IMG/VR virus record: IMGVR_UViG_3300048672_001051
Coordinates: 62,001 to 126,000 of that record
Length of the DNA: 64,000 nt
Reading direction: 5' to 3' (one strand)
The notes beneath the pieces are model-generated. The model ran no database searches and was not told the origin of the DNA. It worked only from the letters and a program-made list of their open reading frames with translations. The first letter of the stretch is position 1. Every line of letters starts with the position of its first letter. The translations under genes were made by a program, and so were the position numbers. Below, piece after piece: positions 7,787 through 48,108 of this stretch.

Positions 7787-10700
7787 TTAGTGGCATTGAC
7801 CCCAATTAGAACCTACGTTCCATGCCATACCAAGCTCTAAAGAGAACTCGTTATATTTAACTGCACGGTCAATACCTTTTCTAATAATGTCAGGTAAAAT
7901 ATTGTTGAGTCCAACATAATACCTACCATCTTCAAGATGTCCAATTTCACTTGTAAGCGCGTTAGCTTTTACAAATTCTTTAGCATCTTCTTCTTTATCA
8001 AATAATTTAACTGTACACATGTTCCGAGGTACTGCGTACTGGTTTTCATCCAATTACATTACGAGTGTCGCAACACACTCTCCGCCTTTTCAGGTAACTT
8101 TTATAAGTTATTTTACGGGGTTAGACCATATCACGATGTTATATAGTAACATCCCTTCCGTTTCGAATCTACATTAGCTTTAGATTCTACTCTACTCCAT
8201 TCATTTTACAATGTGTTTCGATGGCCGTTGAACTTTTTTAAAAATTATAATTACAAGATATGTGTTTCCAAGTGCTTTTTTGCTTGAGTGCTCTAACTAA
8301 AGCATAGTTGTAGCCTAAGTCTCTTATATTAGCAGATGTATGGCCCGACTCGAGTAATTTGCAAATAGCGTGAACAGTATTTTCAGTTGTAATGCAATTA
8401 GCATTATTTGAACCAACTGCTGACCTATTATTCAGATCAAAAGAGTATTTAATATTATAACCATGAGTACACCATTCAAGATTACTTAACGCATTATTTC
8501 TACGATTAGCATCTTTGTGGTTAACTTCTGGTAAATTTTCAGGGTTTGGTATAAAAGCTTCTGCTAAAAGTCTGTGAATACTCTTGCATAATCTTTTACC
8601 GCCAACTCTTAAATTAAGTATTAAATAGCCTTTGCCATTATCTTGGGGTGTCAAAAGTTTTTTATGTTTATTAAAAACTTCACCATTTACAGTTATAAAA
8701 TAACTGTCATATATTTTTTTCATTTTTAAACTTAGCTGCTGATTGCCATATTATATTTATTGTAAATCTAATTACATATTAATTAGAAATTCAATTTTAC
8801 TATAACTTAGGTTTCCAGTCAATTAAAAAGGTTATTCGATATATATCACTATATAAAGCCACAATGAATTATGGTAAGCGATCATTTGATAAATTTTATA
8901 ATCTGATTTATTGTGAACTAAAGGGTTACCCAATAAATCTAACTCTTCTAATTCTTGACAAATCAGAACAGTTGATAATTTTGCCATAGCAGCGCCAGTG
9001 CCTTGAAATAAAAGATTCAATAAACTGTGCTTACTACGCGACATTAGTTTACGGCCATCTATACCAACAATATATTGTTGACCAGAGTCCATCCACTCTT
9101 GTTCTACTTTATCTTTAAGTTCTTTTAAAGCTGGAACAGATTCCCAAAAAAGATCGTATAGACGTTGAGCTTCTTCCGCCGAAATGCTTAGCATCTTCAT
9201 CAGTTTAGTTGCCTGAGCGCCATAAAGAACAGCGTAAGTAAAACTTTTAGCTGCATCTCTAGTAATGCCAAGTTTTCTGGCATTAATGCAATTACCAGAA
9301 ACAAATATCTTATCAGAACGTTTCACTACAACAAAACTTGAAGGTACTGTAACACAACCTACAAAACCATCATAGTCAACTTCTGAATAATAATTTTTGT
9401 TAACTGTAAGGTTAGACTTATTATTTGAAATATAGCACCGATAAATAGTGCAAATGCCTTTAACAGTAGACTTAACAAATTTATTAAAGTGACCTGCACG
9501 ATTTGTTAAATGGCATAAAGTTTGAATAGTTTTAGCTGTTTTAATTGATGTTGTATCTAACACAACATCACTATTTCTAGTAACAGTACCATCCCAAAAC
9601 TGAATCTCATCTAAAACTAAATTCATTTGGCGTGAACTTAATGTTAATAAATTATCTGTAAGCGATTTATCTAAACTTAAAAAATTACGAATTTTAACTG
9701 TGTCTTCTGAAGAATTTAAATAAAAATGATAACTAGTTTCTCTATCTTTTGGGTAAGTTGTAGTATGTGTATAAGTTATCCCAAGATTATCTAAAATATC
9801 TTTAAGCCTTTGAACTTTGCGTTCTTTACTAAAAGAGAACTTTATTCCAGAACAATCTTTAAGTAAATAAGCATCTGCTTGAACAGCTACAGCTAATTTT
9901 AAAAAGTTATCAGAATACTCTGAATTATCTTCTTGCGTGAGAATACCAGTGTTAGGTATGACTCTTGCAGAAGATCTTTTAGTAAAATTATTTGCAGTAG
10001 TTACAGACCAATTCGTGCTATTAGGTAATCTTGAAACTACACGATGTTCTGGAGTGACTAACTGATCTGTTCTAGCTGATTTTATATTTATCATCTTACC
10101 TGTATGTCGCCTCCAAATAACATTAGAAGGTTTCACAAAGGAGATTACACCATCTAGCCACTGTGCAACAAGACAATCTGTAGTGACTTGGTCGAAAGTT
10201 TTCCAACCAGTACTAGTTAATATTTGAGTATCTTCTGAAAAACAATGAATTGAATTAGGTTTTTCAGCCAATAAGTCACGAGCTAAATTTACACCATCTG
10301 TATAATTTAAGCAAAAGTTAGCTTGCACTCGAGCTTCAAGAGAAGCAAAGTCAAAAGCCATTTGCATAAAGCCGTCACCAGCTTTAAACTGACTTCTAAT
10401 AGCGTAGCCTTCAATAGAGGTTACGCGAGGGACATTACAACATAAGTGTTCCCTTGTCATCGCTAGTGACAAGGCGTTTAAAAAAAACTGCTTCATATTT
10501 CTATGAAGATCGGACTATATCTTTGGCATATTTTGGTATACCATAATCTGTTTCGGGTGTCAAAAGCTTACACCCTACGTTATAAAAACTAGTCTCTGAG
10601 CATTCTTCCTATCTTGTTTCTCAACAATATTTAGAAGCTTCGTGGCTGATTGTCCATTGTAATATCTTCTTTATTTTAAAACATTCACGCTTATCTTTTA

Positions 10701-12360
10701 AGATTACGTTGTAGTTAAAGAAGTTTTAGGAGTTTCCAGCAATTAAGATTATTTTAAGTGGGCTTGTAAAGTCAACACCACTGTGCTTATACCTACCGGT
10801 AGAAGCCCCGATAGTGTCAGCTGGAGTAGGCACACGGCCATCCTCCCGAACCATAGACAAATATCCAGTTAGCGGCTCGCCAGATTCATCTTCACTGCCA
10901 CCTGCAATGCTTGCACGTCTATGTTTATAAGTAAGATACTTATTAACAGCACCGACAAACTCTGCATCAGCTCCAATCTTTTCTAAGTTTGGACATATAA
11001 CCTTTTCAGTACCAACACGTAAGCATGGGCCTGTAGGCACTCGTAGAGGCTTGTTAGGGCTTTGACGGTACTTAGCCATCAAGTCATACTTTAAAGACTG
11101 TGGCTTCGATTTGAGCAGCGCTAGACGAGCCTCTCGGAAAGGACCATTAAGAGTACTCTCAACATACCTATCAATTACTTCTACAACTTTATTAGGATGT
11201 AATTTTTGTTTCTTAGCGTCTTTAGTAACATCACGCTCTTTCCACTCAAATGGATCCCAGCCTAAAGTAATTAGATAAGCTTTTAAATGGTCTAAATCTT
11301 TGATAGTTGCAGTTGTTGTTTCTTTAACACAACCTTCATAAGGAAGTTGATATTCTTTATCTTCGAAAATGTAAACATTTTCATCAGTAATAGTACCACC
11401 ATGCTTTTCTGCAAATTTTAACATTATTGCAGACACTGAACCATCAGCTTTAAATTGACGTTTAGGTAAAGTATAAACTTTCTGTTCACCTTTATTTAAA
11501 CGCTTGTCTGGAAGTATAGGATTTACAAATTCTTCAATATCATGAAGAACTTTATCAAACTTTACTAAACAATCTTTAGCCTTTTCAGTATCATATTCAA
11601 AACCAAATAACTCTTGTTTTAAAGTAATATCTGCAAGTTTAATTTCCATCGCGTAAGCTTTACCCCAAGCCCAGCCATCTTTTTCAGATTCAAGTATATT
11701 ATAAATATCTATGTTTACAAGCGTATCTTGTAAACAATACGTAACCATCTTATAAGAATAATTTTCAAATTCGTGGAAATCGCCTTTATAATTACCAATC
11801 TGTTTACCCCAAGCGCCTAAGCCATGCCCGAATATACGGTCAGGATTTAGTAGCTTAGACCAAAGTAAAGTATCAGTAAATACTATAGGAGTACCGAAAA
11901 CTTTAGAGACAGTTTTATATTTAGAACCACCAGTATCTGGATACCCAACTTCATATTCAATCATGTCAAATAATTGAAGAGTTGGCATGTCAAATTTAAT
12001 ACCATTATGAAAAATTAATTCTTCTGGTTCAAATTTTTTAAAAAACTTTTCAAGGTTTTGTTTAGTTAACACTACTTTTTTAATTGAATTATAAAGTATA
12101 CCATCTTGATCTGGAACTATACGTTCAGCTAGACAACTTTTAATCTCATCGAAATAAGATTCAATTTTTGTAATAGGTGCTTTATAACTCATAAATTCTT
12201 TTGGAATAAAAGCAAAAGAATTTCTAGTGTCAACACAAGTAACCATAACGACATGTAGCTTAGCAGTCGGTTTTAAAGTGTACGGCATTGTAGCATATGA
12301 TAACATATTAGCTAGTAAATTGTTAGACTCTATGTCTAAAACAACTTTTTTGAACATCAA
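7787..12360 (-). CDS. polA: family A DNA polymerase, three exons (12360-10775, 10440-8871, 8050-7787), containing an intein
   Basis: Exo I LDIES, motif A DFASLEAR, motif B RDAAKSFTYAVLYG, motif C YH|DE restored by splicing. Joined exons total 3420 nt (1139 aa, 821 aa after intein removal). Confidence 0.93.
8051..8870 (-). mobile_element. group I intron (polA intron 2, 820 nt) with HNH homing endonuclease
   Basis: 5' splice site after ...TACCAT (U.G with guide GTGG); terminal G before GATGAA; P10 TTCATT/GATGAA; P ATTGACTGGAAAC, Q AATCAGCAGC, R GTTCAACGGCCA, S GATATGGTCT. Confidence 0.92.
8238..8723 (-). CDS. intron-encoded HNH homing endonuclease (I-HmuI-like)
   Basis: [37 protein letters not shown] motif. 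Confidence 0.9.
   Translation of the reverse strand: [161 protein letters not shown]
9291..10244 (-). mobile_element. intein in polA (318 aa) with LAGLIDADG-type endonuclease domain
   Basis: H|CFSEDTQILTSTGWK, block B VTPEH, LAVAVQADAY and QFWDG motifs, C-terminal FVSGN|C; removal restores NSIHCINARKLG. Confidence 0.92.
10441..10774 (-). mobile_element. group I intron (polA intron 1, 334 nt, no ORF)
   Basis: Splicing gives HSGV-CNVPRV; P10 TTACAA pairs with 3' exon TTGTAA; P ATTGCTGGAAAC, Q AATCAGCCAC, R CTCAGAGACTAG, S AAGATATAGTCC; ends in G. Confidence 0.92.
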
Positions 12361-18566: not shown

Positions 18567-19517
18567 TTAGAGTGCGCAAGCGCCGCTCTCACAGCCTGAA
18601 GCTGTTTTGTCAGAATCTTCTGCGGAGTCAGTATCTTCTTCAGCATCAGTATCCATTACTGTATAGTAACTAGTTTTCAAACCCATCTTAAAAAAATAAG
18701 CAAGTTCTGCTATAGACTCTCTTAAAGATCTAGTTTTTTTATCACCACGCATATCATAATAAGTATCTGCACTGATAGCTTGACCACAAAATTTTTGAAC
18801 GATTGCATAACAATCAATCATATCATAATAAGGAATATCATATCCAAATTCATAATAACTTTGTAAACGTTCGTACTCAGGTGCAATAAAAATATTCGTA
18901 TAACTGTTATCTGTTTTTACTAAAGTTGGTCTACGTATTGGGTAAAGACCGTTTGTACTATTAGTAGCCTTACTAGAAGCTTCACATGGCATGAAAGCCT
19001 CAAGAACACTAAAAGCAATACCACCTTGTGCAATTATGCCGGCACGTAAAGTTTCCCAATCATATCGTAATTCAAAATTAGCAATTCCATCAACATTTTT
19101 ATTATAAGTGTCAATAGGTAGCCAACCCTGAGGATACTTAGTCTTATGAATCCAGGGAGCATTGCCGTATTTTATTGCAATATCTAAAGCAGCTTTATGT
19201 AGAAAGTAACTATGTCTTTCAGCAATAAAGTGTAAAAATACTTTACCTTCTTTAGAAGTATAATATTTTTTATTACGAGCCATGCAATAAGCAAGATTAG
19301 TAACACCAATCCCTACAGACATTCTATTTTTAGTAGTATAACCTACACGCGGTAAAGTATATTCTGTACCTAAGATGACTGCTCGAGCAGTCATCAACAT
19401 TGTATAACATTTTTTGTAATACTCTTCGTCTGTATAATCTTTGTGTAGATTAATAGCGCCAATATTACAAATAGCAATTTCATTTTTAAATGATTTTGAA
19501 ATAATTTTCTTAGACAA
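18567..19517 (-). CDS. nrdA: ribonucleotide reductase alpha subunit, C-terminal part
   Basis: EIAICNIG, GIGVTNL, AFMPCEASS, LKTSYY, C-terminal CESGAC; TTG start with GGTGA 5 nt upstream. Confidence 0.88.
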   Translation of the reverse strand: MSKKIISKSFKNEIAICNIGAINLHKDYTDEEYYKKCYTMLMTARAVILGTEYTLPRVGYTTKNRMSVGIGVTNLAYCMARNKKYYTSKEGKVFLHFIAERHSYFLHKAALDIAIKYGNAPWIHKTKYPQGWLPIDTYNKNVDGIANFELRYDWETLRAGIIAQGGIAFSVLEAFMPCEASSKATNSTNGLYPIRRPTLVKTDNSYTNIFIAPEYERLQSYYEFGYDIPYYDMIDCYAIVQKFCGQAISADTYYDMRGDKKTRSLRESIAELAYFFKMGLKTSYYTVMDTDAEEDTDSAEDSDKTASGCESGACAL

Positions 19518-20997
19518 TTATGTCACCAACTTTAACATTTTCTACATTAATTTGTTCACCATTAACTTTTAAAATCTCTGAAGCATGTAATAGTTCTGAA
19601 CTACCATCATCATAAATAATTTCATAGTAATCAGCTTCATGAGTTTTAAATAAATCTTTGACGTGAAGCAAAGCTCCAGTAACTAGTGTTATCTCAACAC
19701 AAAGATTAGACATTTTAATAGGCTCAAGAAATGGAGTATGATGATTAACTTCATAACTATTAAACTTATACAGACGACCACTTTCAAAAGGTTCTTTAGC
19801 AATCAAAGCTGCAAGATTAACTGCTTTAATTAAAGTTTTAGGTACATCTGGATTATTTAAATATTTAAAATAAAGTTCTTTAAAACCTTCATAATCATCA
19901 GAATCAAATTTAGCATAAAGATCTGGTGCATGATAAAGACTAATAAGCATCCAAGGAGTTTTTGTATTTATAGCTTCAATTAAAAAAGGATGTAATTTAA
20001 TATTATAATCAATACCAGGAACTCTTCGAGATTCAATTGATTTTGGATTTCGAAGTTTGATAATAATTTCAATTTCAGGATCTAAACTAGATACATAAGT
20101 TGTTGCAGCACCACCCCGGCTATTTTGTTTATTAGCACCAACTAAAGATTGAAGAACTCTGAAATAAGGTAATTTGCCTTGATGTTCAATTGTACCTTTT
20201 TTAATTGGATCCATTAAGCTACGAACACCATAAAGTGAGCCTATTCCAGCGCCTGCAACAGTCATTGTAGAGACTGCATAAGACTTAGCATCAATAGAGT
20301 CAATAGCATCTTCACATTCAATTAAACAGCAACTAGCTCCAGTTTTATTTACAGTTCCAAGATAGACCATATTAGGTGAAGGTAAGTTAACATCATGACT
20401 AGAATAGTCTTCATAGTAAGAAATAATATCATTTAAAAAAGACTGATGATCATACGCCGACAATGTTGTTGAATTAGTGTAAGCTACATAAATTGCAACA
20501 CGCATGTAAGTAAATTGAGGAGTTTCGTATAACTTACTAGTAGCTACATCTTTAATAATATATTTATCTACAAGTTGTTTTAATACTGTATAAGTATAAG
20601 TATAATCTAACTGATGATTGATTTTAGATTCAATAAAGTCTAGATCACTATCAGACAAATTAAAATCTCGGTAAAACCCAAGATCAATCATTCTGTAATA
20701 CTGATCTTTAAAAGTAGCTACAATGTTATCTGGAAAAACATTCTTAATAATTATTGGAAGATATAACCTACCTGCTGCTTTAAGTGATTTATCAGTTTCG
20801 TATTCTAAGCAAGTTTTAATTAAAGCTTCTTGTAGTTGTACAGTAGTACATTTATCATATATTTTTTTAACAGCACGGAGTGATATATCACTCCAAATTG
20901 TATCGTTCTGATACGCGAATTCCATCCACTTATTTAATTTTAATGGATCAAACTCTTGCAGCGAGCCATCTCGCTTTACAATATGGTTTATTGTCAA
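19510..20997 (-). CDS. nrdA: ribonucleotide reductase alpha subunit, N-terminal part
   Basis: ATP cone VKRDG, ETPQF, PSP, ASCCL, SRGGA and the catalytic SNLCVE; stops after a Hint-like tail. Confidence 0.9.
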   Translation of the reverse strand: MTINHIVKRDGSLQEFDPLKLNKWMEFAYQNDTIWSDISLRAVKKIYDKCTTVQLQEALIKTCLEYETDKSLKAAGRLYLPIIIKNVFPDNIVATFKDQYYRMIDLGFYRDFNLSDSDLDFIESKINHQLDYTYTYTVLKQLVDKYIIKDVATSKLYETPQFTYMRVAIYVAYTNSTTLSAYDHQSFLNDIISYYEDYSSHDVNLPSPNMVYLGTVNKTGASCCLIECEDAIDSIDAKSYAVSTMTVAGAGIGSLYGVRSLMDPIKKGTIEHQGKLPYFRVLQSLVGANKQNSRGGAATTYVSSLDPEIEIIIKLRNPKSIESRRVPGIDYNIKLHPFLIEAINTKTPWMLISLYHAPDLYAKFDSDDYEGFKELYFKYLNNPDVPKTLIKAVNLAALIAKEPFESGRLYKFNSYEVNHHTPFLEPIKMSNLCVEITLVTGALLHVKDLFKTHEADYYEIIYDDGSSELLHASEILKVNGEQINVENVKVGDIIV

Positions 20998-40294: not shown

Positions 40295-42688
40295 TTAAAC
40301 ACATGAAGTATAATTAGCAACACTATTAAGAACTTGATAATGTTGCAATGCTTTTGTTGTAGTACCGGTAGAGCCGTAACGAGCAACATACGCTTGAGCT
40401 GCTGAAACATCTTCACCAGCTAAATGAGTGCGAATGATCTCTTGAACAGTCCGGTAATCATCAAGTGTACGAGAGGCTGACATATTTGAACCACTAATAA
40501 AAGTAACTTTTTTATGTGTGACAATTTCAGTCAAAACACATTGAAATAAGTTAGCTAGTAGTGACGCAGCAATATCATTGCCACTGAACATTTGCTCAGG
40601 ATTATCGTCAGTACCTCGAGCGTCTACCTCAGCACAGGATTCTATTTGAACTTCTTCAAAGTCGCTAAAAATATCTGCATGATCAATTGTATAATAATCA
40701 CGACCTAAACGGTTGTAATAAACTTGACCATTAAATAAATTAACGCCAGCAGAAAAATAGTAATTATTCCAGTTAAATGCTTCAGAATTAGCTGAGATAT
40801 ACAAATCTAATGCTTTTTTAAAACCTTCATTATCGACTAAATTCATAACATGACTTGTATTATCAATACCAATATCTTTGATATCAATAAATAAATCAAG
40901 ATCGCGATTTAGGTCAGCAGGATTTTCATAAGCAAATTCATCGTAGTCTGAATAGTAGCCAAACTTCGGCAAGTACGAAACAGTGATATTTTGATATAAA
41001 CCGTTGTAACGGTTTGACAAAACTTCAGCTTTGTTTAAGCCAATATCTGCTGAAATAAAGTTCTGCCGAAGCAAATTCTTTTGTTCCCATTTGTTACAAT
41101 TTGAAACTTAGATATTTATTATATTTTCTATCTAAAAAAATAGAAGAATCTTTGTACAATAAATCTAAGAATGTATTTACATTTTGCTTACCAGAAAGCG
41201 TTAAAGCATAACAGCAATTTTCAGTATTAAATCTTTTATATAATTTAGTATTAAATTTAATTGAACAATCAGCCTCAATTAAACTTTTAACTTCATTTAA
41301 AAAAGATTTAGTTCCAGCAATAGATGCACAGTAGCGCGTATAGCCATCCTTACATAAAGATTTAGACATACTGCCATCACCATCAAAGTAACCCCTAATA
41401 AAATGAATAAAAAATTCTTTTGGGATATTTGGAAACTTAAAATCTGTTGTTTTATTTCTGGTAAAACCAAGACTGCGTAATTTGCTAATCATGTGTAAGT
41501 TTGAAAAAGACAGCGAACAAACATTTGTTATTTTGCCAGTAAAGGTACATAACTGTGTAAATGTTTTAATTTTAACGTCACTTTTTAAACAAATTTTAAT
41601 TTTTTCTAAGATTTCAATATCTTTTGAGTTTAATGCAATTTTAAGCTCATAGTCACCGACGTAACCGTCAGCAGCAATAAATCCTAAAATGTAAGCTTTT
41701 TCCTCAGTATTTATGATATCAAAAAAATTATAATCTGCTTTAATAGTATTAAGCCAATCAACTGGCCTTTTAAAATTGTGTCTCTTAGCTAGTGCGTTTA
41801 CATTGACTAGGCTGCAGTTATATTTTATAGCTAACTCTGAAGTTGTCAGACCTTTATCATAATCTTTTAATAAATTTATTACGTCATTTTTAACATGAAA
41901 TAAACCTGCTTTGAATAAACGCCTTTCAGCAGTTTTTTCAGAACAATTTAAAATACGCATAACGTCATTTTTATCAATAAGATTTTTAAAAGAAAGACTT
42001 TTTAAAAGAGTTAACTCTTTAATAATAACATCTTGTTTAATTGGTAAGTACATTATTTTGACTCCTATAATTGTACAATGTGGCGAGACCACTATTGAGA
42101 AAAACAATCATATCAGACAAAATTTCAAACGTCAACCTCCTTTCTGTTCGGGGTTGAACTTTGGCTTGATATTATCTTTAAATAATACCTAGTGTATAAT
42201 ATGCCAAAGAGCAGACTATCGCATAAACTAATGTAATCCCTACATTAGTTTCTCTTTCGCTTAGTCGTTCACGGTGCCTTGAGTTTTAATAGATTTTTAA
42301 ATCTATCTCATGCTTCCGCCTTGTTGTCCTTATACTAGGAGTTCCAAGTCAATTAGAAAGAGTTTTATATCGTCCAACATTAAACGATATCGCCATCAAC
42401 AAGAATAATTTCAACTTTAAAGTTGTGACTACGTTTATGCAAAAGATCATTATAGATCTTTAACAGTTTTGGAAGAATCCAACTTGTAGTACCACCAGCG
42501 CCAAAAATAAATAACTTCTGATCTAAGTACTCCCGTGGAAGCTCTTTTGCATTTTTTAACAGACGAAGAAAAGCAAATTTATCTAACGCATCAATAGCTG
42601 AAATTTTTTCAGGTTGTACTGGACGATATTTAAGTGCACGAATCCACTGCGCCAGTGTGATTTGTTTTAAAATAGGTTCTACTTTCAT
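40295..42688 (-). CDS. ThiF/E1-like adenylyltransferase, two exons (42688-42383, 41086-40295), 365 aa
   Basis: FIFGAGGTTS nucleotide-binding loop; spliced VDGDIV|EQKNLLRQNF; NKAEVL; SCAE...EQ...NDIAA as in PRTRC-type ThiF. Confidence 0.9.
41087..42382 (-). mobile_element. group I intron (1296 nt) in ThiF gene
   Basis: P1 ATATCGTT/GACGATAT ending in U.G; P TTGACTTGGAAC, Q ACAAGGCGGAAG, R GTGAACGACTA, S GCGATAGTCT; terminal G before GAACAA; reading frame restored. Confidence 0.9.
41094..42053 (-). CDS. intron-encoded double-motif LAGLIDADG homing endonuclease
   Basis: YILGFIAADGY and FIRGYFDGDGS; likely start MYLPIKQ with AGGAG upstream. Confidence 0.88.
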   Translation of the reverse strand: MYLPIKQDVIIKELTLLKSLSFKNLIDKNDVMRILNCSEKTAERRLFKAGLFHVKNDVINLLKDYDKGLTTSELAIKYNCSLVNVNALAKRHNFKRPVDWLNTIKADYNFFDIINTEEKAYILGFIAADGYVGDYELKIALNSKDIEILEKIKICLKSDVKIKTFTQLCTFTGKITNVCSLSFSNLHMISKLRSLGFTRNKTTDFKFPNIPKEFFIHFIRGYFDGDGSMSKSLCKDGYTRYCASIAGTKSFLNEVKSLIEADCSIKFNTKLYKRFNTENCCYALTLSGKQNVNTFLDLLYKDSSIFLDRKYNKYLSFKL

Positions 42689-42731: not shown

Positions 42732-45700
42732 TCAGTGTTGCGTGACTAAAGCGTTGTGATAGCTGTCTATCAAGAATTTCGCCTCTTCGGCAGGATCCAT
42801 ACTGTCATACGGTACGTCATCATCAACTACAATAATGCTAGAATTTTCTGCATCAGGCGCAGAAAAAATGTCTTGCTCAGAACCGACAGCCAGAAGACCT
42901 TGATTGAAAAAGTGACTTAATTCATTCAATTGATCTTCTGTAAAAGCTGTTTGATAGCCAACAATATCTAACAAAGTTGTAAACAAGTCTACAATTTCGT
43001 CCATGTTTAGTGGTACAGAAGTTTTAGCGTAATAAGGCGTAGGCAACAAACGTCCCAACAACTTCTCAAACTCTTGCAGTAACCGGTGCTGTTGAGTATC
43101 AATAGCCCAAAGAGTTAAATAGACACTTAACGGCTGATATCTTGGATAAACCGGTGGAACATATGGTTTACCTTTACCAGCAGGTGGTGTATAACCAAGA
43201 GCACCAACTGACTTATTGTACGAAGCAATTTCAACAATTTTATCTTCAGAGCCAGCAGGTACACTGTAATCAGAATCTTCTTGAAGTTTTTCAATATCGC
43301 GATCAAAAATATCGTTAACTTTCAAAACAACTTGTTGTTGATTTGAAGCAGCACGAACAACAATTTCAGGGACTTCATTACTAAGCTTACCAATAACGCC
43401 AAACAAACGAGAAGCCTTCTCGTCGTTTAAATCACCACCACTGAAGAATGCCATAATATTCAATACAGATCGTTAATCTGTACCCGCACCTATTAAAGAT
43501 GCTGCTTATACTTTCATATAAGAGTAGACTATATCTTCTTTCAGTTTAAACTGAAAGCTCTCCATTTCCACCCACTTGGGTGTACGATACTCGATTCATT
43601 CAAAAAGAATGTCTTTCTCTAGTCGTTGAACTTTTACCGTAGAATAAATTCTTTAGGTACTTAGCTGCTGATTATCCAATTCTATTAATTTTCAAACATT
43701 CACACTTATCTTTTCAGATTATGTTGTAGTTTAATAGACTCTTATGAATTAATAATACAATCTAATACATATTTTTCTGTAATTAATTTTTTATAAATAA
43801 TTCTAACTAATTTAATATTATTATCTAAACAATATTGATTTTTAATCTCATCACATTCTTTTGAATATTCTGAGTACCATATATGATTTTCATCATAATG
43901 TTGTAACCCATCCGCTTCAATCATAAGATTTTTAGAGGGGATATAAAAATCAATCCTTAAAGGGTATCCTTTAGGAGATAATAATTTTTCATTAGTATAT
44001 TCACAAATAATATTATTATAATTAGCACTTAATGCATTATAAATATTATTTTCAAAGTTAGAATTACTTTTAAAAAATCCTAGCATATTATTTAAATTAC
44101 ACATTGAAATTTTTAATTTAGTTAAAGTTTTATTAGATCTTTTAATAGTGTTAATAATTTCACTATTAGTACAATATCTATTCTTACTTAAAATAAATTC
44201 TAAAATTTCTTTTTCTACTACCTCTTTAGTTAATTCTTCAGAGGATCTTCGAGCTTTTGCTGCACAAGATTTTGAGCAAAATATGGTATTAAGTGTATAC
44301 TTAGTGCCATACTGCATATTAGTGTATAAATTTAAATATTCTTTATTACAGAATTTACATATTTTTTTATTACTTTTCATATCCTATTTCCAATTATATT
44401 TTAATTTCTGCTATTAAAAAGCATTAATATAATTATAATTGAAAGACTTATCAAAGTCGAGGAAAGGAACTTCCAGCAATTAGAAGAGTTTTACATGAGC
44501 ACATTTAAGCTTTACTCATATCTACATGCGACATTGTAGATGTGTTATGAATTGTTTTTTAATATACAATTCCTTGACAAGAATTTCTTTGTAATATAAA
44601 CTTTACGTCATTACACCATGACTATATAAGTCAAAATTTTACGACATAAAGCAGGTACATTAAAATTTGTTAAAACTAGAAAAATACAAAGACTATATTA
44701 TAACAAATATAGCGCAAAACAAACCAATTAGCATAATAGCTAAAGAGTTAAATGAATACCCTCAAGCAGTTAGAAACGTAATAAAAAAATACTTACCTGA
44801 TAAAAAATTTATACATGATCAGGGAAATATTTCTTATTTTAATAAAATAGACTGTGATGCTAAAGCATACTTTATAGGCTTCATTGCTGCAGATGGATCA
44901 CTAGTAAAACGTAAAAGTGATAATAGCATAGCATTAAGTATAACTATCAATAAAAAAGATAAATTAATACTAGATACTTTAAAAAATTGTATAGGTTGTG
45001 AAAATCCTGTAAGTTTTTTAAAATTAAATGATTTAGTAAGGTTTGTTATACAAAACAAACAAATATCAGATGATCTACAAACTTACGGAATTGAGCCTAA
45101 CAAATCTTTAACTATGCCGTCAATTATTCATAAAATACCGAAAGAATACAGAAAAGCATTCTTAAGAGGTTATTTTGATGGCGATGGTAGTGTATTCAAA
45201 AGTTCTAAAAACAAATATTATGTAACTATAAGAGGCACGTTAGAATTTTTACAAGCATACATAGAAGAGTTTAATTTAAGTTCGTATTCGTTAAAAAAAT
45301 ACGATTACGAAAAAATTGGGAAATTAACAACAGGGTCTAAAGACTCTATTAAAAAATTTATAACTATGTATGAAAATTCTGAAATACACTTACAAAGAAA
45401 ACATGAAATATTTTTAAATTTCATGGAAAAACATTGTCAAGATCAGACTATCTCATCACCCTAGTTTAACTAGGGTGTGCGGCACTCGTGTCGGTCTTAT
45501 TGGACTAGATCCTCAACCGTTAGTCGTTACACCCAACTGACTACTTTTACTCTATTCGTCAGTCTTGGCACGGTATTGTCCTTTTTCTAGGAGTTTCACC
45601 GTTAGCATTAACTATATTAGTTAACACACCCTTTTCAGGTTCACCGCATTATTCAATTAGCATTACTGCTAAAGGCCACTCGCTTTTAATGGATATCCAT

Positions 45701-46111
45701 AACGATGAAAAAGTTTGAATTGTTAAGCATCGCAGGATCATTTTGAAAATTAACTGTAGCCCCACCAACACGTTGTTCAGGCACATACAGAAAATAGTCT
45801 TGCTTTGCAATATCCCAATAAATTGAGATATACACTTCTGATCGCATCTTATTTTTAATAACGCGGAAAAATTCAACGATATTAGTAAGAAGTGCGACGG
45901 GAATTTTCGGAAGTGCAGAAACGTAGCTAACTTCACAAGTTTGATTAAGACCTAAACGCTTTAGGTCAATCTTATCAATTTGAATAGTAAAAGTGCCTAC
46001 AGGCTCTTTACGACGTTGCCAAATACCATTAGCAAAAGCAGCGTTTGAGAACTTTTTAGTTTCATCAAAACATTCTACTGTAAAGCCATTTAAATCAGGA
46101 AACATACTCAT
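42732..46111 (-). CDS. JAB/MPN metalloprotease (PRTRC protein A-like), three exons (46111-45689, 44531-44514, 43451-42732), 386 aa
   Basis: Spliced sequence reads ...SEV...VPEQ...MDIH|SHVDMS|AFFSGGDLNDE, the canonical E...HSH...S..D JAB motif. Confidence 0.9.
43452..44513 (-). mobile_element. group I intron B of JAB gene (1062 nt)
   Basis: P1 ATGAGT/GCTCAT; P10 AATGT/GCATT; P ATTGCTGGAAG, Q AATCAGCAGC, R GTTCAACGACTAG, S AAGATATAGTCT; ends ...ATTATG. Confidence 0.92.
43742..44380 (-). CDS. intron-encoded Vsr/EDxHD-like homing endonuclease
   Basis: CKFC...FCSKSC zinc motif; RIDFYIPSKNLMIEADGLQHY...DEIKNQYC. Confidence 0.8.
   Translation of the reverse strand: MKSNKKICKFCNKEYLNLYTNMQYGTKYTLNTIFCSKSCAAKARRSSEELTKEVVEKEILEFILSKNRYCTNSEIINTIKRSNKTLTKLKISMCNLNNMLGFFKSNSNFENNIYNALSANYNNIICEYTNEKLLSPKGYPLRIDFYIPSKNLMIEADGLQHYDENHIWYSEYSKECDEIKNQYCLDNNIKLVRIIYKKLITEKYVLDCIINS
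44574..44602 (+). promoter_or_regulatory. sigma70-like promoter for the antisense endonuclease
   Basis: TTGACA (44574-79), 17 nt, TAAACT (44597-602), 65 nt upstream of the plus-strand ORF. Confidence 0.65.
44667..45464 (+). CDS. LAGLIDADG homing endonuclease, antisense within intron A
   Basis: YFIGFIAADGSL and FLRGYFDGDGSV; homologous to the 41094-42053 enzyme. Confidence 0.88.
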   Translation: MLKLEKYKDYIITNIAQNKPISIIAKELNEYPQAVRNVIKKYLPDKKFIHDQGNISYFNKIDCDAKAYFIGFIAADGSLVKRKSDNSIALSITINKKDKLILDTLKNCIGCENPVSFLKLNDLVRFVIQNKQISDDLQTYGIEPNKSLTMPSIIHKIPKEYRKAFLRGYFDGDGSVFKSSKNKYYVTIRGTLEFLQAYIEEFNLSSYSLKKYDYEKIGKLTTGSKDSIKKFITMYENSEIHLQRKHEIFLNFMEKHCQDQTISSP

Positions 46112-46959
46112 TGGAAAAATCTACCTACACGGGTTAGTTCATTACGAGTTATATTACGTAAAAAATTTTGGGATGGGCTTGGCAATACATTGTATTGATA
46201 ATACATGTAAATATAAGACATTTCATTTAATCGCAAATGAGCTTCATTTGTAAAAAAGTCTGGTCTGAAAACAGTTTGAAGAAAATCTTTAAATCCAGGC
46301 GTAGAATTTACTAGATCTCTACCTACAGCCACGTTAGGATCTAAATCTGTATTAAACAAACTGCTTAAGTACAAACGTACAAAACCTGCTTGGTCTGCTG
46401 GTGAAGTAGAATTCAAAACAGCTTGTGCTGTGTCTGCAATGTCATGAGGCCAACAAATTTTATCACTGTAGTGATTATTAAATACACTTTTATGATATTT
46501 TGTTTCGTCTGTAACATTTAAACTCAAGCCTGTCATTTCAGCAAAACAGACATTATAACTAATAAAATTTCGAGAAGCATTATTGTTTGAAATAATAAAA
46601 CCTAAAATATTTTTAAATTTAAATGCTGGAAAGTTTAATGCATGACGATTACCAACACTGTGCACTTTAAAGTGATCGTTTGGTATTAGATACTGACTAA
46701 TCGTATCAACTGAGTTACCAGCAAAATTCAAAGCTACAGTCAATTCTGGATAGTGAAACAAACGTTTAATTCGTGATTCTAAAATGACTTCACGAATTAA
46801 GTTTGTACCAATATATCCAGAGTCTTTACGAGAAACTTTCTGTGCACCAAAAAAGTCAACAATATCTGTATAAGGAATTTGTTTTGTAATTTGACGGCCT
46901 TGCTCTTCAGTGGTAACTGCAACATGAGTAGCTTGTGGAATATATTTAAAAGTAATCAT
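46108..46959 (-). CDS. prokaryotic E2-like protein (Prok-E2 family D / PRTRC protein B-like)
   Basis: YHKSVFNNHYSDKICWP and YLSSLFNTDL patterns; lies between Ubl and JAB. Confidence 0.65.
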   Translation of the reverse strand: MITFKYIPQATHVAVTTEEQGRQITKQIPYTDIVDFFGAQKVSRKDSGYIGTNLIREVILESRIKRLFHYPELTVALNFAGNSVDTISQYLIPNDHFKVHSVGNRHALNFPAFKFKNILGFIISNNNASRNFISYNVCFAEMTGLSLNVTDETKYHKSVFNNHYSDKICWPHDIADTAQAVLNSTSPADQAGFVRLYLSSLFNTDLDPNVAVGRDLVNSTPGFKDFLQTVFRPDFFTNEAHLRLNEMSYIYMYYQYNVLPSPSQNFLRNITRNELTRVGRFFQ

Positions 46960-47318
46960 AAGTATTGTGAACTCTGAAGTGGGGCGCTAAGCGAAGCTTT
47001 AAAAAATGTCTTAAATTCTAAAAAGTAACTTAAAGGAATAACGACACGATCAGTTTCTGCATCTAATGCCTGCAGAAACTGCGTAAGATTTTGATTACTA
47101 GGTTGAAATGCAGAAAAATGCGAATAAGCCGCAGCTTTATCTGCCCGACATCTGCGAAAAAAATCAACTAAATTTTGAAAATTAGTATCAACAACGCCAG
47201 CAGAATTTACAAAATTTTGTAAATTATCATAAAAAATATTGAGCGGTGTAGGTTCGTTATTAGATTGTAATTGGTCTTGGATATTCATAGACGTAATATT
47301 TCTCAGAGTTAGGTACAA
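46956..47318 (-). CDS. hypothetical protein within the Ubl module
   Basis: ORF; likely start MNIQDQL. Confidence 0.5.
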   Translation of the reverse strand: MYLTLRNITSMNIQDQLQSNNEPTPLNIFYDNLQNFVNSAGVVDTNFQNLVDFFRRCRADKAAAYSHFSAFQPSNQNLTQFLQALDAETDRVVIPLSYFLEFKTFFKASLSAPLQSSQYL

Positions 47319-47859
47319 CAGTCAAGGGGACTATAGTCAACCGCGGACCATCTGTAACGTTGCCAGTATTTGCTACTTTAAAATAGCTACCAGCAGAATC
47401 TTTTATGGCAATTCTTTGGCTCATAAATACAGCTAAGAAGTCTTCAGTCTTTGTATGAATAGCAAATTCAAGATAAAGGCTAGGACATAACTGATCGGGA
47501 GTTACGTTAAAAGTGCTACACAAACCATTTTCAAAAGATTTGTAACGTTCTAAAGGGTACAAAAGCAATTGATTTAATAAAGTTGCTTCTAGAGTTTCAT
47601 TTAAGCTAAATACGAAGTTTTTAAAACTAGTACCTAATTGTAAATAATACTCAGGTTTTACTAAAGGTTCTACAGTTGATTTATTATGAATTATAGATAA
47701 ATATTTTTCATAATTAATATGTTCAACTACAGTTTTAACCCACTCTACAAATTTCTGTTTTTTTATATTATCTAAATTTTGACAATATCTATAAAGAATA
47801 TAACCTTTTAATTCGTACATAATAATTTCTTTGGCAGTATAAAAAGGTTGAGGTTGCAC
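47260..47859 (-). CDS. hypothetical protein within the Ubl module
   Basis: ORF; likely start MYELKG at about 47819. Confidence 0.5.
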   Translation of the reverse strand: MQPQPFYTAKEIIMYELKGYILYRYCQNLDNIKKQKFVEWVKTVVEHINYEKYLSIIHNKSTVEPLVKPEYYLQLGTSFKNFVFSLNETLEATLLNQLLLYPLERYKSFENGLCSTFNVTPDQLCPSLYLEFAIHTKTEDFLAVFMSQRIAIKDSAGSYFKVANTGNVTDGPRLTIVPLTVVPNSEKYYVYEYPRPITI

Positions 47860-47871
47860 TCGTGCAACCTC
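47850..47871. terminator. hairpin downstream of the Ubl gene
   Basis: GAGGTTGCAC-TC-GTGCAACCTC perfect 10-bp stem. Confidence 0.55.
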
Positions 47872-47895
47872 ACTAGCTAAGCTTTCGCCAGCTTA

Positions 47896-48108
47896 TTACG
47901 CAGCGTTTTTAGTGCCGGTAGGGATGGTAAATGTTAGAACATTTACACCGTTAACAACGTTAACAACAGGTGTAGCATTACGCAATTCTGCGTAAGTGCC
48001 CGACAATTCAGTCTTAATTTGTTCTGGGGTGTAACCAGTAACAGTAGAGTTGATGCCGCCAGCTGGGTATTGAACTTGGTAAACAGTTTGAGTGAACATA
48101 GTAGTCAT
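47896..48108 (-). CDS. ubiquitin-like protein (PRTRC protein C-like)
   Basis: 70 aa; TPEQIKTELSGTYAELRNA and C-terminal LTFTIPTGTK match the Prok_Ub pattern; ends GTKNAA. Confidence 0.75.
   Translation of the reverse strand: MTTMFTQTVYQVQYPAGGINSTVTGYTPEQIKTELSGTYAELRNATPVVNVVNGVNVLTFTIPTGTKNAA

What the first reader, a model, noticed from the sequence alone, without database searches (positions are those of the whole stretch)
44514..44531. 18-nt micro-exon between two back-to-back group I introns encodes part of the JAB zinc site
TCGCATGTAGATATGAGT (SHVDMS) lies between intron A (ends ...ACAATG) and intron B (starts AAAGCTT...). Both junctions have guide support: intron A GCGA pairs exon TCGC, and intron B GCTCAT pairs exon ATGAGT with the U.G wobble. 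The exon supplies the second His of the HSH motif, so both splicing events are needed for an active protease. About 10 of its 18 nt are used in P10 of one intron and P1 of the next, which may impose a splicing order or allow exon skipping. The two insertion sites are so close that each endonuclease recognition site should be altered by the other intron.
Basis: seen in the sequence. Interest (0 to 1): 0.85.

Follow-up and report, generated by a model that had tools for sequence, protein, structure and literature searches.

The report
18-base exon between two phage introns
A jumbo-phage gene for a zinc protease (JAB/JAMM type) is interrupted twice, 18 bases apart, by two unrelated self-splicing group I introns; the six codons between them carry one of the zinc-binding histidines, a layout well known in fungal mitochondria but which I did not find described for a phage.

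Summary
On the minus strand, exon 1 (46111..45689, ends ...MDIH) is followed by intron A (45688..44532), the micro-exon (44531..44514, SHVDMS), intron B (44513..43452) and exon 3 (43451..42732, AFFSGGD...). Spliced together they give an exact JAMM motif, HxHx7SxxD. Both introns match the Rfam group I model (48.8 and 43.3 bits, just under the 50-bit cut-off). ORF-less or simpler relatives at the same sites score 60 to 78.5 bits. Natural alleles fix the junctions to the nucleotide: A only (L003, L008), B only (L007, L010), both with the same 18 nt (L004), and neither (137 of 154 proteins examined, all with six residues at this place). P1 and P10 pairings covary with the exon sequence. An intact homolog folds as an MPN domain that matches AMSH and Rpn11. 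Splicing itself is inferred, since no RNA data were available. I found no support for a forced splicing order or for exon skipping. The claim about mutual disruption of endonuclease sites is untested. The wider result is that this 42-nt motif holds at least five intron sites, and one relative carries three introns and two 18-nt micro-exons. The mechanism is ordinary: a new member of a known kind.

The parts
45689..46111 (-). Exon 1 of the JAB/JAMM gene (141 codons). It ends ...FFIVMDIH, contains the invariant Glu (E92, in SEVY), and its last codon is the first zinc His.
   Evidence: aligns to residues 4-143 of the intact homolog L018:1042-2136; E92 and H141 are invariant
44532..45688 (-). Intron A, a group I intron of 1157 nt. 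The 5' exon ends in U, paired U.G in P1, and the intron ends in G.
   Evidence: Rfam RF00028, 48.8 bits, E = 2.5e-10 over 45698..45423; the orthologous site-A intron in L008 scores 62 bits; 19 of 49 consensus pairs are compensatory across 4 family members; 95-97% identical to the L003 copy
45676..45683 (-). Internal guide sequence of intron A. GCGA forms P10 with micro-exon nt 1-4, and GUGG forms P1 with CCAU of exon 1.
   Evidence: P1 covaries: C:G in the window, L003 and L008 versus G:C in L014 and L038. P10 covaries: UCGC/GCGA versus UCACA/UGUGA in L008 and L038.
44667..45464 (+). LAGLIDADG homing endonuclease gene (265 aa, two motifs) encoded antisense to intron A. It lies inside the loop closed by the long-range P9 pairing CUUGACAA (45441..45434) / UUGUCAAG (44580..44573).
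   Evidence: Pfam LAGLIDADG_3, 3e-14; PHROG 4645, 3e-41; P9 strands located; the same antisense layout is seen in L003, L008, L014 and L043
44514..44531 (-). Micro-exon TCGCATGTAGATATGAGT = SHVDMS. It holds the second zinc His of HxH.
   Evidence: identical 18/18 in L003 and L004
43452..44513 (-). Intron B, a group I intron of 1062 nt from a different family than A. The 5' exon ends in U (U.G in P1) and the intron ends in G.
   Evidence: Rfam RF00028, 43.3 bits, E = 1.1e-8 over 43729..43505; the ORF-less ortholog in L004 (344 nt) scores 78.5 bits and the L007 site-B intron 60 bits; 21 of 52 consensus pairs are compensatory
44493..44505 (-). Internal guide sequence of intron B. AAUGU forms P10 with GCAUU of exon 3, and GCUCAU(GU) forms P1 with (AU)AUGAGU of the micro-exon.
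   Evidence: P1 covaries: AUGAGU/GCUCAU versus UUCGGU/GCCGAA in L007. P10 covaries: GCAUU/AAUGU versus GCUUUU/AAAAGU in L007 and L010.
43742..44380 (-). Intron B's sense-strand endonuclease ORF (212 aa). It is absent from the otherwise orthologous intron in L004.
   Evidence: PHROG 559, 9084 and 7140 ('homing endonuclease', 'intron encoded nuclease'), 3e-20 to 8e-12; weak DUF5889/DUF559 matches; no sequence match in the PDB
42732..43451 (-). Exon 3 (239 codons plus stop). It starts AFFSGGDLNDEK..., which supplies the Ser and Asp of the JAMM motif.
   Evidence: aligns from residue 150 of the intact homolog

Best explanation
Two unrelated mobile group I introns have each inserted into the DNA that encodes the zinc-binding JAMM motif (HxHx7SxxD) of a jumbo-phage JAB/MPN+ metalloprotease gene. 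One sits right after the first His codon (site A) and the other 18 nt downstream (site B). The gene is transcribed as one precursor, and each ribozyme removes itself by the normal two-step group I pathway. Intron A aligns its 5' splice site through P1 (CCAU with GUGG, U.G wobble) and its 3' splice site through P10 with the first 4 nt of the micro-exon. Intron B uses the last 6 to 8 nt of the micro-exon as the exon strand of its P1, and uses the start of exon 3 for its P10. Ligation of exon 1, the 18-nt exon and exon 3 restores ...MDIH-SHVDMS-AFFSGGD... Each intron carries its own endonuclease gene: an antisense LAGLIDADG gene in the P9 loop of A and a sense ORF in B. This explains their independent spread into intron-less alleles by double-strand-break repair. 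Shown here: the DNA anatomy, homology to group I introns, structural covariation, natural alleles with each combination of introns, and the conservation and fold of the host protein. Inferred: actual self-splicing, the activity of the endonucleases, and the protease function.
For: Rfam matches to both introns, with above-threshold matches for their orthologs. All 13 introns examined at this locus in different phages have a 5' exon ending in U and end in G themselves. P1 and P10 covary with synonymous or replacement changes in the exons. The allele series fixes the boundaries: L003 and L008 carry A only, with SHxxxx fused to AF(F/Y)S; L007 and L010 carry B only, with HSHxxxG fused to exon 1; L004 carries A and B with the same micro-exon; and the intron-less L018, L005 and 137 of 154 proteins examined have exactly six residues there. 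E94, H143, H145, S153 and D156 are invariant in 60 homologs. An AlphaFold model of the intact homolog (pLDDT 86) has JAMM deubiquitinases as its top PDB matches, including AMSH, Rpn11, Sst2, BRCC36 and CSN5. Intron A is 95-97% identical between the window and L003, whereas the flanking exons are 82-84% identical and the upstream gene 74%, which is a signature of recent horizontal movement.
Against: There are no RNA data, so splicing is not demonstrated. Both window introns score slightly below Rfam's curated cut-off (48.8 and 43.3 versus 50 bits), probably because of the ORF insertions. P1 and P10 of intron A are short (4 + 4 bp; reached in 48 of 5000 shuffles). The host family matches Pfam Prok-JAB only below threshold (18.9 to 23.8 versus 25 bits), and a sequence profile finds nothing in the PDB, so JAB membership rests on the motif and the predicted fold.
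Confidence: 0.88

Rival explanations
1. The gene is a decaying pseudogene. The introns, or one of them, no longer splice, so the micro-exon is a relic and no active protease is made.
For: Both introns score just under the Rfam gathering threshold. Large ORF insertions can impair folding. No expression data are available. One relative (L043) has a frame-shifted antisense endonuclease gene, which shows that decay does occur in this family.
Against: All three exons keep open frames and every invariant residue. The guide sequences still match their exons and covary across phages. Both endonuclease ORFs are intact. Intron A is 95-97% conserved against a phage whose exons have diverged 16-18%.
Confidence: 0.07
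2. The tandem arrangement has a regulatory role. A forced splicing order, or skipping of the in-frame 18-nt exon, would produce a His-less, catalytically dead JAB protein alongside the active one.
For: The exon is a multiple of three, so skipping would keep the frame. Ten to twelve of its 18 nt are committed to helices of the two ribozymes. Two ribozyme cores must dock within 18 nt of each other.
Against: The P10(A) and P1(B) segments do not overlap. Intron A's P10 strand has 0 bp with exon 3 and intron B's P1 strand has 1 bp with the exon 1 tail, so no guide pairing favours skipping. Each intron exists alone in relatives, so neither needs the other. In fungal mitochondria, exons as short as 3 nt lie between group I introns (PMC2987802).
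Confidence: 0.08
3. There is no real micro-exon. The whole 45688..43452 stretch is one composite insertion or twintron, and the SHVDMS reading is a coincidence.
For: Gene callers annotate only fragments (P0001 starts MAFFSGG). An ATG precedes each downstream exon.
Against: L003 has the same 18 nt contiguous with exon 3 and no intron B. L007 and L010 have the equivalent codons contiguous with exon 1 and no intron A. The intact homolog needs exactly residues 144-149 between the two aligned blocks. The second His is invariant. The two ribozyme cores are separate and complete.
Confidence: 0.02

Closest known systems
Mini-exons between group I introns in fungal mitochondrial genes (for example Agaricus bisporus cox1, exons down to 3 nt; PMC2987802; 'occur regularly', PMC10352661)
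   Same: There is a very short coding exon flanked on both sides by self-splicing group I introns that carry LAGLIDADG-type endonuclease genes. The exon encodes highly conserved residues, and automated annotation misses it.
   Different: Here the host is a bacteriophage genome rather than an organelle. The host gene is a JAB/JAMM protease rather than a respiratory gene. One endonuclease gene is antisense to its intron. Splicing would have to be protein-independent or rely on bacterial or phage factors.
Multi-intron phage genes (T4 td/nrdB/nrdD introns; intron-rich jumbo 'Jug' phages with terL split into 2-3 pieces, PMC12880540; phage PhiPA3 intron endonuclease, PMC11620839)
   Same: Mobile group I introns with homing endonucleases sit in conserved, functionally critical codons of phage genes. 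Several genes in the same genome are interrupted: in this window, DNA pol A (Rfam hit) and, judged by eye, the E1-like gene. Homing leaves co-conversion signatures.
   Different: In the papers I read I found no report of two introns only 18 nt apart, nor of a single catalytic motif carrying five alternative insertion sites.
Neighbouring inteins in haloarchaeal MCM (PMC10643990)
   Same: Several selfish elements, each with its own homing endonuclease, target closely spaced sites in one conserved motif. Single-occupied and double-occupied alleles coexist in nature.
   Different: Those elements are inteins (protein splicing) rather than introns. Interference between neighbours was measured there and is only hypothesised here.
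Twintrons (an intron inside an intron)
   Same: Two catalytic introns are adjacent, and the arrangement can be confused with a twintron during annotation.
   Different: This is not a twintron. The two introns are separated by a genuine exon, and each has its own P1 and P10 on exon sequence.

Membership tests
Group I intron (Rfam RF00028): intron A | Conserved catalytic core (P3-P8, with P7 forming the G-binding site) detectable by the covariance model | tested here: inconclusive
   48.8 bits against a gathering score of 50, E = 2.5e-10, full model 1-253. The homologous intron in L008 scores 62 bits. 19 of 49 alifold pairs are compensatory.
Group I intron (Rfam RF00028): intron A | 5' exon ends in U paired with G in P1; the intron ends in G; P10 pairs with the 3' exon | tested here: met
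   CCAU/GUGG with U.G; terminal G at 44532; UCGC/GCGA. Both helices covary in L008, L014 and L038.
Group I intron (Rfam RF00028): intron B | Conserved catalytic core detectable by the covariance model | tested here: inconclusive
   43.3 bits against 50, E = 1.1e-8. The ORF-less ortholog in L004 scores 78.5 bits and L007 scores 60 bits. 21 of 52 pairs are compensatory.
Group I intron (Rfam RF00028): intron B | U.G at the 5' splice site in P1; terminal G; P10 | tested here: met
   (AU)AUGAGU/GCUCAU(GU); G at 43452; GCAUU/AAUGU; 0 of 5000 shuffles reach this total. P1 and P10 covary in L007.
Group I intron (both) | GTP-dependent self-splicing that yields ligated exons | not testable with these tools
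   No RNA data were available. This needs RT-PCR or an in vitro splicing assay.
JAB/JAMM (MPN+) metalloprotease | E...HxHx7SxxD zinc and catalytic motif | tested here: met
   H141 | S-H-VDMS | AFF-S-GG-D across the three exons, plus E92. The five residues are invariant in 60 homologs.
JAB/JAMM (MPN+) metalloprotease | Significant match to Pfam Prok-JAB / JAB | tested here: inconclusive
   Intact homologs score 18.9-23.8 bits against a cut-off of 25. P0004 carries a precomputed weak PF14464 hit. The exon pieces alone give no hit. A profile search against PDB sequences found nothing.
JAB/JAMM (MPN+) metalloprotease | MPN fold | tested here: met
   AlphaFold model of the intact homolog L018:1042-2136, pLDDT 86 (above 90 for residues 11-220). 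The top Foldseek PDB hits are all MPN/JAMM proteins, including AMSH, Rpn11, Sst2, BRCC36 and CSN5, with probability about 1.0 and TM (target-normalised) 0.5-0.58. The test was made on a homolog that is 53% identical to exon 1 (49% over the first 74 residues of exon 3), not on the window's own spliced product.
LAGLIDADG homing endonuclease (intron A ORF) | Two LAGLIDADG motifs and a Pfam match | tested here: met
   PF14528, 3e-14, above the cut-off. The motifs FIGFIAADGSL and LRGYFDGDGSV are visible.
Twintron | One intron inserted inside another, with no exon between them | tested here: not met
   An 18-nt exon separates the introns. It is present as ordinary coding sequence in single-intron and intron-less alleles.

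The most novel reading that the evidence does not exclude
The 42 nt that encode the JAMM motif of this jumbo-phage JAB family act as a multi-site landing pad for group I introns, with at least five sites (+0, +6, +18, +22 and +36) and up to three introns with two consecutive 18-nt micro-exons in one allele. The spacing is so tight that neighbouring introns would behave as one mobility unit. ORF-less introns (intron B in L004; introns A and B in L038) would be carried along by co-conversion whenever the endonuclease of a neighbour 18 nt away cuts an empty allele. That would be a form of collaborative or piggy-back homing, and it could also serve phage-versus-phage competition.
Probability: 0.3. 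Interest if true: 0.65.

Novelty: new member of a known kind. Interest (0 to 1): 0.5.

Why it matters
The finding shows that mini-exon gene structures, which are familiar from fungal mitochondria, also occur in phage genomes. There, gene callers report them as unrelated fragments: the database entries for this gene start at MAFFSGG or MSHVDMS. This matters for annotating intron-rich jumbo phages. The locus also offers a compact natural system, with all four occupancy states of sites A and B plus a triple-intron allele, for asking how closely spaced homing elements help or hinder each other and whether group I ribozymes can work when their exon-binding helices share an 18-nt exon. It does not reveal a new mechanism.

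Tried and rejected
(1) Nucleotide search of the region against 50,697 phage records found only short intron-core matches and no relative of the locus. (2) Single-protein scans of viral contigs with exon 1 and exon 3, and an exact search for the 18-mer, found only the source contig IMGVR_UViG_3300048672_001051. (3) Pfam, NCBIfam and PHROGs searches on the separate exon pieces and on the neighbouring genes gave nothing useful, apart from a weak PRTRC-ThiF/ThiF hit on the downstream gene. (4) PADLOC gave no hit for the JAB family and only E1-like hits for the ThiF neighbour, so the locus is not assigned to a known defence system. (5) A profile of 60 homologs searched against PDB sequences gave no hit, so fold comparison was needed. 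(6) The intron B ORF searched against PDB sequences gave no meaningful hit, so its endonuclease class (its ExDGxxH motif looks to me like the DUF559/Vsr type) stays unresolved. (7) Rfam did not detect the introns of L014, intron 3 of L038, or the putative intron in the window's E1-like gene; these were assigned by reading P1, the terminal G and the reading frame. (8) The first alignment was too diverse for the metagenome scan and a narrower one was used. (9) I first took the Glu of VPEQ to be the catalytic Glu and rejected that: it is K, R, V or H in relatives, whereas E92 is invariant. (10) The promoter scan was not enriched over shuffles (27 sites against 20.3 +/- 5.5), so the promoter-like site upstream of the antisense endonuclease gene is only a lead.
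Full report
**Source and context.** The window is part of IMGVR_UViG_3300048672_001051, a 229,656-bp viral contig. It has about 31% G+C, and nearly all genes lie on the minus strand. The region is the replication and nucleotide-metabolism module of a jumbo phage, with DNA polymerase A, a RecQ-like helicase, primase-helicase, ribonucleotide reductase, RecA and an SbcC-like ATPase. No close relative exists among 50,697 deposited phage genomes.

**The observation.** The layout on the minus strand is:
- Exon 1 ends ...ATG GAT ATC CAT at 45689, and a stop follows immediately.
- After 1157 nt that end in ...ACAATG (G at 44532) come the 18 nt TCGCATGTAGATATGAGT (44531..44514).
- After a further 1062 nt that end in ...TATTATG (G at 43452), the frame resumes with GCA TTC TTC AGT GGT GGT GAT (43451 onward).
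- Joined together, the product reads ...MDIH-SHVDMS-AFFSGGD..., which is an exact JAMM motif HxHx7SxxD.

**Are the flanks group I introns?**
- With permissive filters, Rfam RF00028 matches 45698..45423 (48.8 bits, E = 2.5e-10) and 43729..43505 (43.3 bits, E = 1.1e-8), each over the full model. Both fall just below the curated 50-bit threshold.
- Homologous introns at the same sites in other phage contigs pass the threshold: the ORF-less intron B of L004 scores 78.5 bits, the site-B intron of L007 scores 60 and the site-A intron of L008 scores 62.
- RNAalifold on four site-A introns and on three site-B introns independently predicts P1 involving the last exon nucleotides, with U.G at the splice site in every sequence. 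Compensatory changes occur in 19 of 49 and 21 of 52 pairs.
- All 13 introns I delimited at this locus follow a 5' exon that ends in U, and all end in G.

**Guide sequences.**
- Intron A: GUGG (45679..45676) pairs with CCAU of exon 1, and the adjacent GCGA (45683..45680) pairs with UCGC, the first four bases of the micro-exon.
- Intron B: GCUCAU(GU) (44500..44493) pairs with (AU)AUGAGU, the last 6 to 8 bases of the micro-exon, and AAUGU (44505..44501) pairs with GCAUU of exon 3.
- Shuffling the first 40 nt of each intron reaches the observed P1+P10 total in 48 of 5000 trials for A and 0 of 5000 for B.
- The helices also covary with the exons in relatives. In P1(A), C:G changes to G:C where the exon reads GTG CAT or ACG CAT (L014, L038). 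In P10(A), UCGC/GCGA changes to UCACA/UGUGA (L008, L038). In P1(B), AUGAGU/GCUCAU changes to UUCGGU/GCCGAA (L007). In P10(B), GCAUU/AAUGU changes to GCUUUU/AAAAGU (L007, L010).

**Natural alleles fix the junctions.**
- A homology search with exon 3 alone returned P0002, which starts M-SHVDMS-AFFSGGDL, P0003, which starts M-AFFSGGDL, and the uninterrupted P0004 (...VMDIH-SHNTMG-AFFSGTD).
- L003 is a 78-kb contig whose exon 1 is 89% identical in protein. It has intron A at the same nucleotide but no intron B, so the 18 nt run straight into GCATTTTTCAGT.
- L004 has the end of intron A, the identical 18 nt, and a 344-nt ORF-less intron B.
- L008 and L009 have a site-A intron only. L007 (ORF-less) and L010 to L012 (sense LAGLIDADG) have a site-B intron only.
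- An exhaustive HMMER search with exon 1 found 464 relatives. Of the 154 proteins examined (the 150 best representatives plus the four), 137 carry an uninterrupted HxHx7SxxD. The other 17 are fragments, most of which break off at these intron sites.
- The closest intact homolog (L018:1042-2136, 365 aa) aligns to exon 1 through residue 143 and to exon 3 from residue 150. That leaves exactly six residues, SHNVMG.

**The host gene.**
- In an alignment of 60 intact homologs, E94, H143, H145, S153 and D156 are invariant.
- Pfam Prok-JAB matches these homologs only below threshold, and a sequence profile finds nothing in the PDB.
- An AlphaFold model of the intact homolog is confident (mean pLDDT 86). 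Its best PDB matches are all JAMM/MPN proteins, including AMSH, Rpn11, Sst2, BRCC36, CSN5 and archaeal Rpn11/JAMM1.
- The gene is followed by a ThiF/E1-like gene in every relative examined.
- The biological role of this JAB-E1 pair in the phage is unknown. It did not match any PADLOC defence model beyond the generic E1 similarity.

**Mobility.**
- Intron A carries a 265-aa double-motif LAGLIDADG gene on the opposite strand. The gene lies within the loop closed by a long-range P9 pairing (45441..45434 with 44580..44573). This antisense layout recurs in L003, L008, L014 and L043.
- Intron B carries a 212-aa sense ORF that matches phage homing-endonuclease PHROGs. The ORF is absent from the L004 ortholog.
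- Intron A is 95-97% identical between the window and L003. The flanking exons are 82-84% identical and the upstream gene 74%. This fits recent horizontal transfer with a short co-conversion tract; the 18-nt exon is identical in the window, L003 and L004.

**A hot spot.** Following the relatives showed that the same 42-nt motif hosts at least five insertion sites:
- A (+0).
- E (+6, after the second His codon; L043).
- B (+18).
- C (+22; L014, which has a 22-nt micro-exon between a site-A intron and an unrelated intron).
- D (+36).

L037 and L038 carry three introns (A, B and D) separated by two 18-nt micro-exons (SHVNMS and AFFSGV). There, both zinc histidines and the motif's Ser and Asp are each encoded on a different exon. 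Rfam supports introns 1 and 2 of that allele. Targeting of active-site codons by homing elements is a known principle (PMC2988022).

- The two guide segments on the micro-exon do not overlap. Intron A's P10 strand has no complementarity to exon 3, and intron B's P1 strand has 1 bp with the end of exon 1. Each intron exists alone in relatives. Nothing therefore indicates a compulsory order or programmed skipping, although neither is excluded without RNA data.
- The existence of all four occupancy states argues that at least one route to double occupancy is open. Whether either endonuclease is hindered by the neighbouring intron is untested. For neighbouring inteins such interference has been measured (PMC10643990).

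**Comparison and novelty.** Mini-exons between group I introns are routine in fungal mitochondria, where they can be as short as 3 nt (PMC2987802, PMC10352661). Intron-rich jumbo phages have also been described (PMC12880540). The mechanism here is standard. What is new is the host and the density: a phage gene, with 18 nt between introns and a five-site hot spot. I rate it a new member of a known kind, of moderate interest, and a useful warning for phage annotation.

**Constraints.** Exon pieces and natural intact homologs were used instead. No step needed referral.

Noticed in passing
L038:1625-3223 (also L037): A related phage contig carries three group I introns inside the JAMM motif (sites A, B and D). 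They are separated by two consecutive 18-nt micro-exons, TCACACGTAAATATGAGT (SHVNMS) and GCTTTTTTCTCTGGTGTT (AFFSGV). Only the third intron has an ORF. Both zinc histidines and the motif's Ser and Asp each lie on a separate exon.
   Followed up: partly
L014:5430-7876: A second, independent twin-intron allele. It has a site-A intron with an antisense LAGLIDADG gene, then a 22-nt micro-exon (TCACATAATGTAATGAGTGCGT), then an unrelated intron at +22 (P1 AGUGCGU/GCGCACU) that carries a 201-aa ORF. Rfam detected neither intron; both were assigned by reading P1, the terminal G and the frame.
   Followed up: partly
L043:3158-4221: An intron of the A family sits 6 nt further downstream, after the second His codon (CAT TCG CAT|). 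Its antisense LAGLIDADG gene is split into two ORFs and appears to be decaying. This is a fifth insertion site in the motif.
   Followed up: partly
window 44667-45464 (+); L003:7071-7868; L008:5652-6617: The LAGLIDADG gene of intron A is encoded antisense to the intron and the host gene. It lies inside the P9 loop, and its last codons overlap the P7/P8 core. This orientation is conserved across phages whose exon 1 proteins are only 42-50% identical to the window's. Antisense endonuclease genes are documented for nuclear rDNA introns (PMC9548176); I found no phage example in the papers I searched. A promoter-like site lies at 44574..44602 on the plus strand, but such sites are not enriched over shuffles.
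   Followed up: partly
L003:6400-7026: The L003 copy of intron A carries a second endonuclease gene (a sense LAGLIDADG_2, 208 aa). It is inserted between the P7 5' strand and the P3 3' strand, where the window has only about 30 nt. One intron therefore holds two homing endonuclease genes on opposite strands.
   Followed up: no
window 40295-42688 (-): The downstream ThiF/E1-like gene is also interrupted inside a conserved motif. Exon 1 ends ...VDGDIV at 42383. A putative group I intron spans 42382..41087 (P1 AUCGUU/GACGAU, ends in G) and carries a sense LAGLIDADG ORF at 42107..41094. Exon 2 starts EQKNLLRQNF at 41086. Rfam did not report it at E <= 10.
   Followed up: partly
window 10491-10837 (-); 18567-20997 (-): A group I intron above the Rfam threshold (62.8 bits) lies between two large ORFs, the downstream of which matches DNA polymerase A and also contains a LAGLIDADG segment. 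The ribonucleotide reductase large subunit also looks split into two adjacent ORFs. The genome appears rich in introns.
   Followed up: no
window 42732-48108 (-); L003, L007, L008, L010: The gene order (about 70-aa ORF, about 190-aa, about 100-130-aa, about 280-350-aa, JAB, ThiF/E1-like) is conserved in several jumbo-phage contigs and sits next to RuvC, RecA and thymidylate synthase genes. The upstream proteins match no Pfam, NCBIfam, PHROG or PADLOC family. The function of the cassette in the phage is unknown.
   Followed up: partly
window 45776-45778 (E112) versus 45836-45838 (E92): The Glu in VPEQ, which looks like the JAMM catalytic Glu, is replaced by K, R, V or H in relatives. The invariant Glu is E92, in SEVY.
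   Followed up: yes
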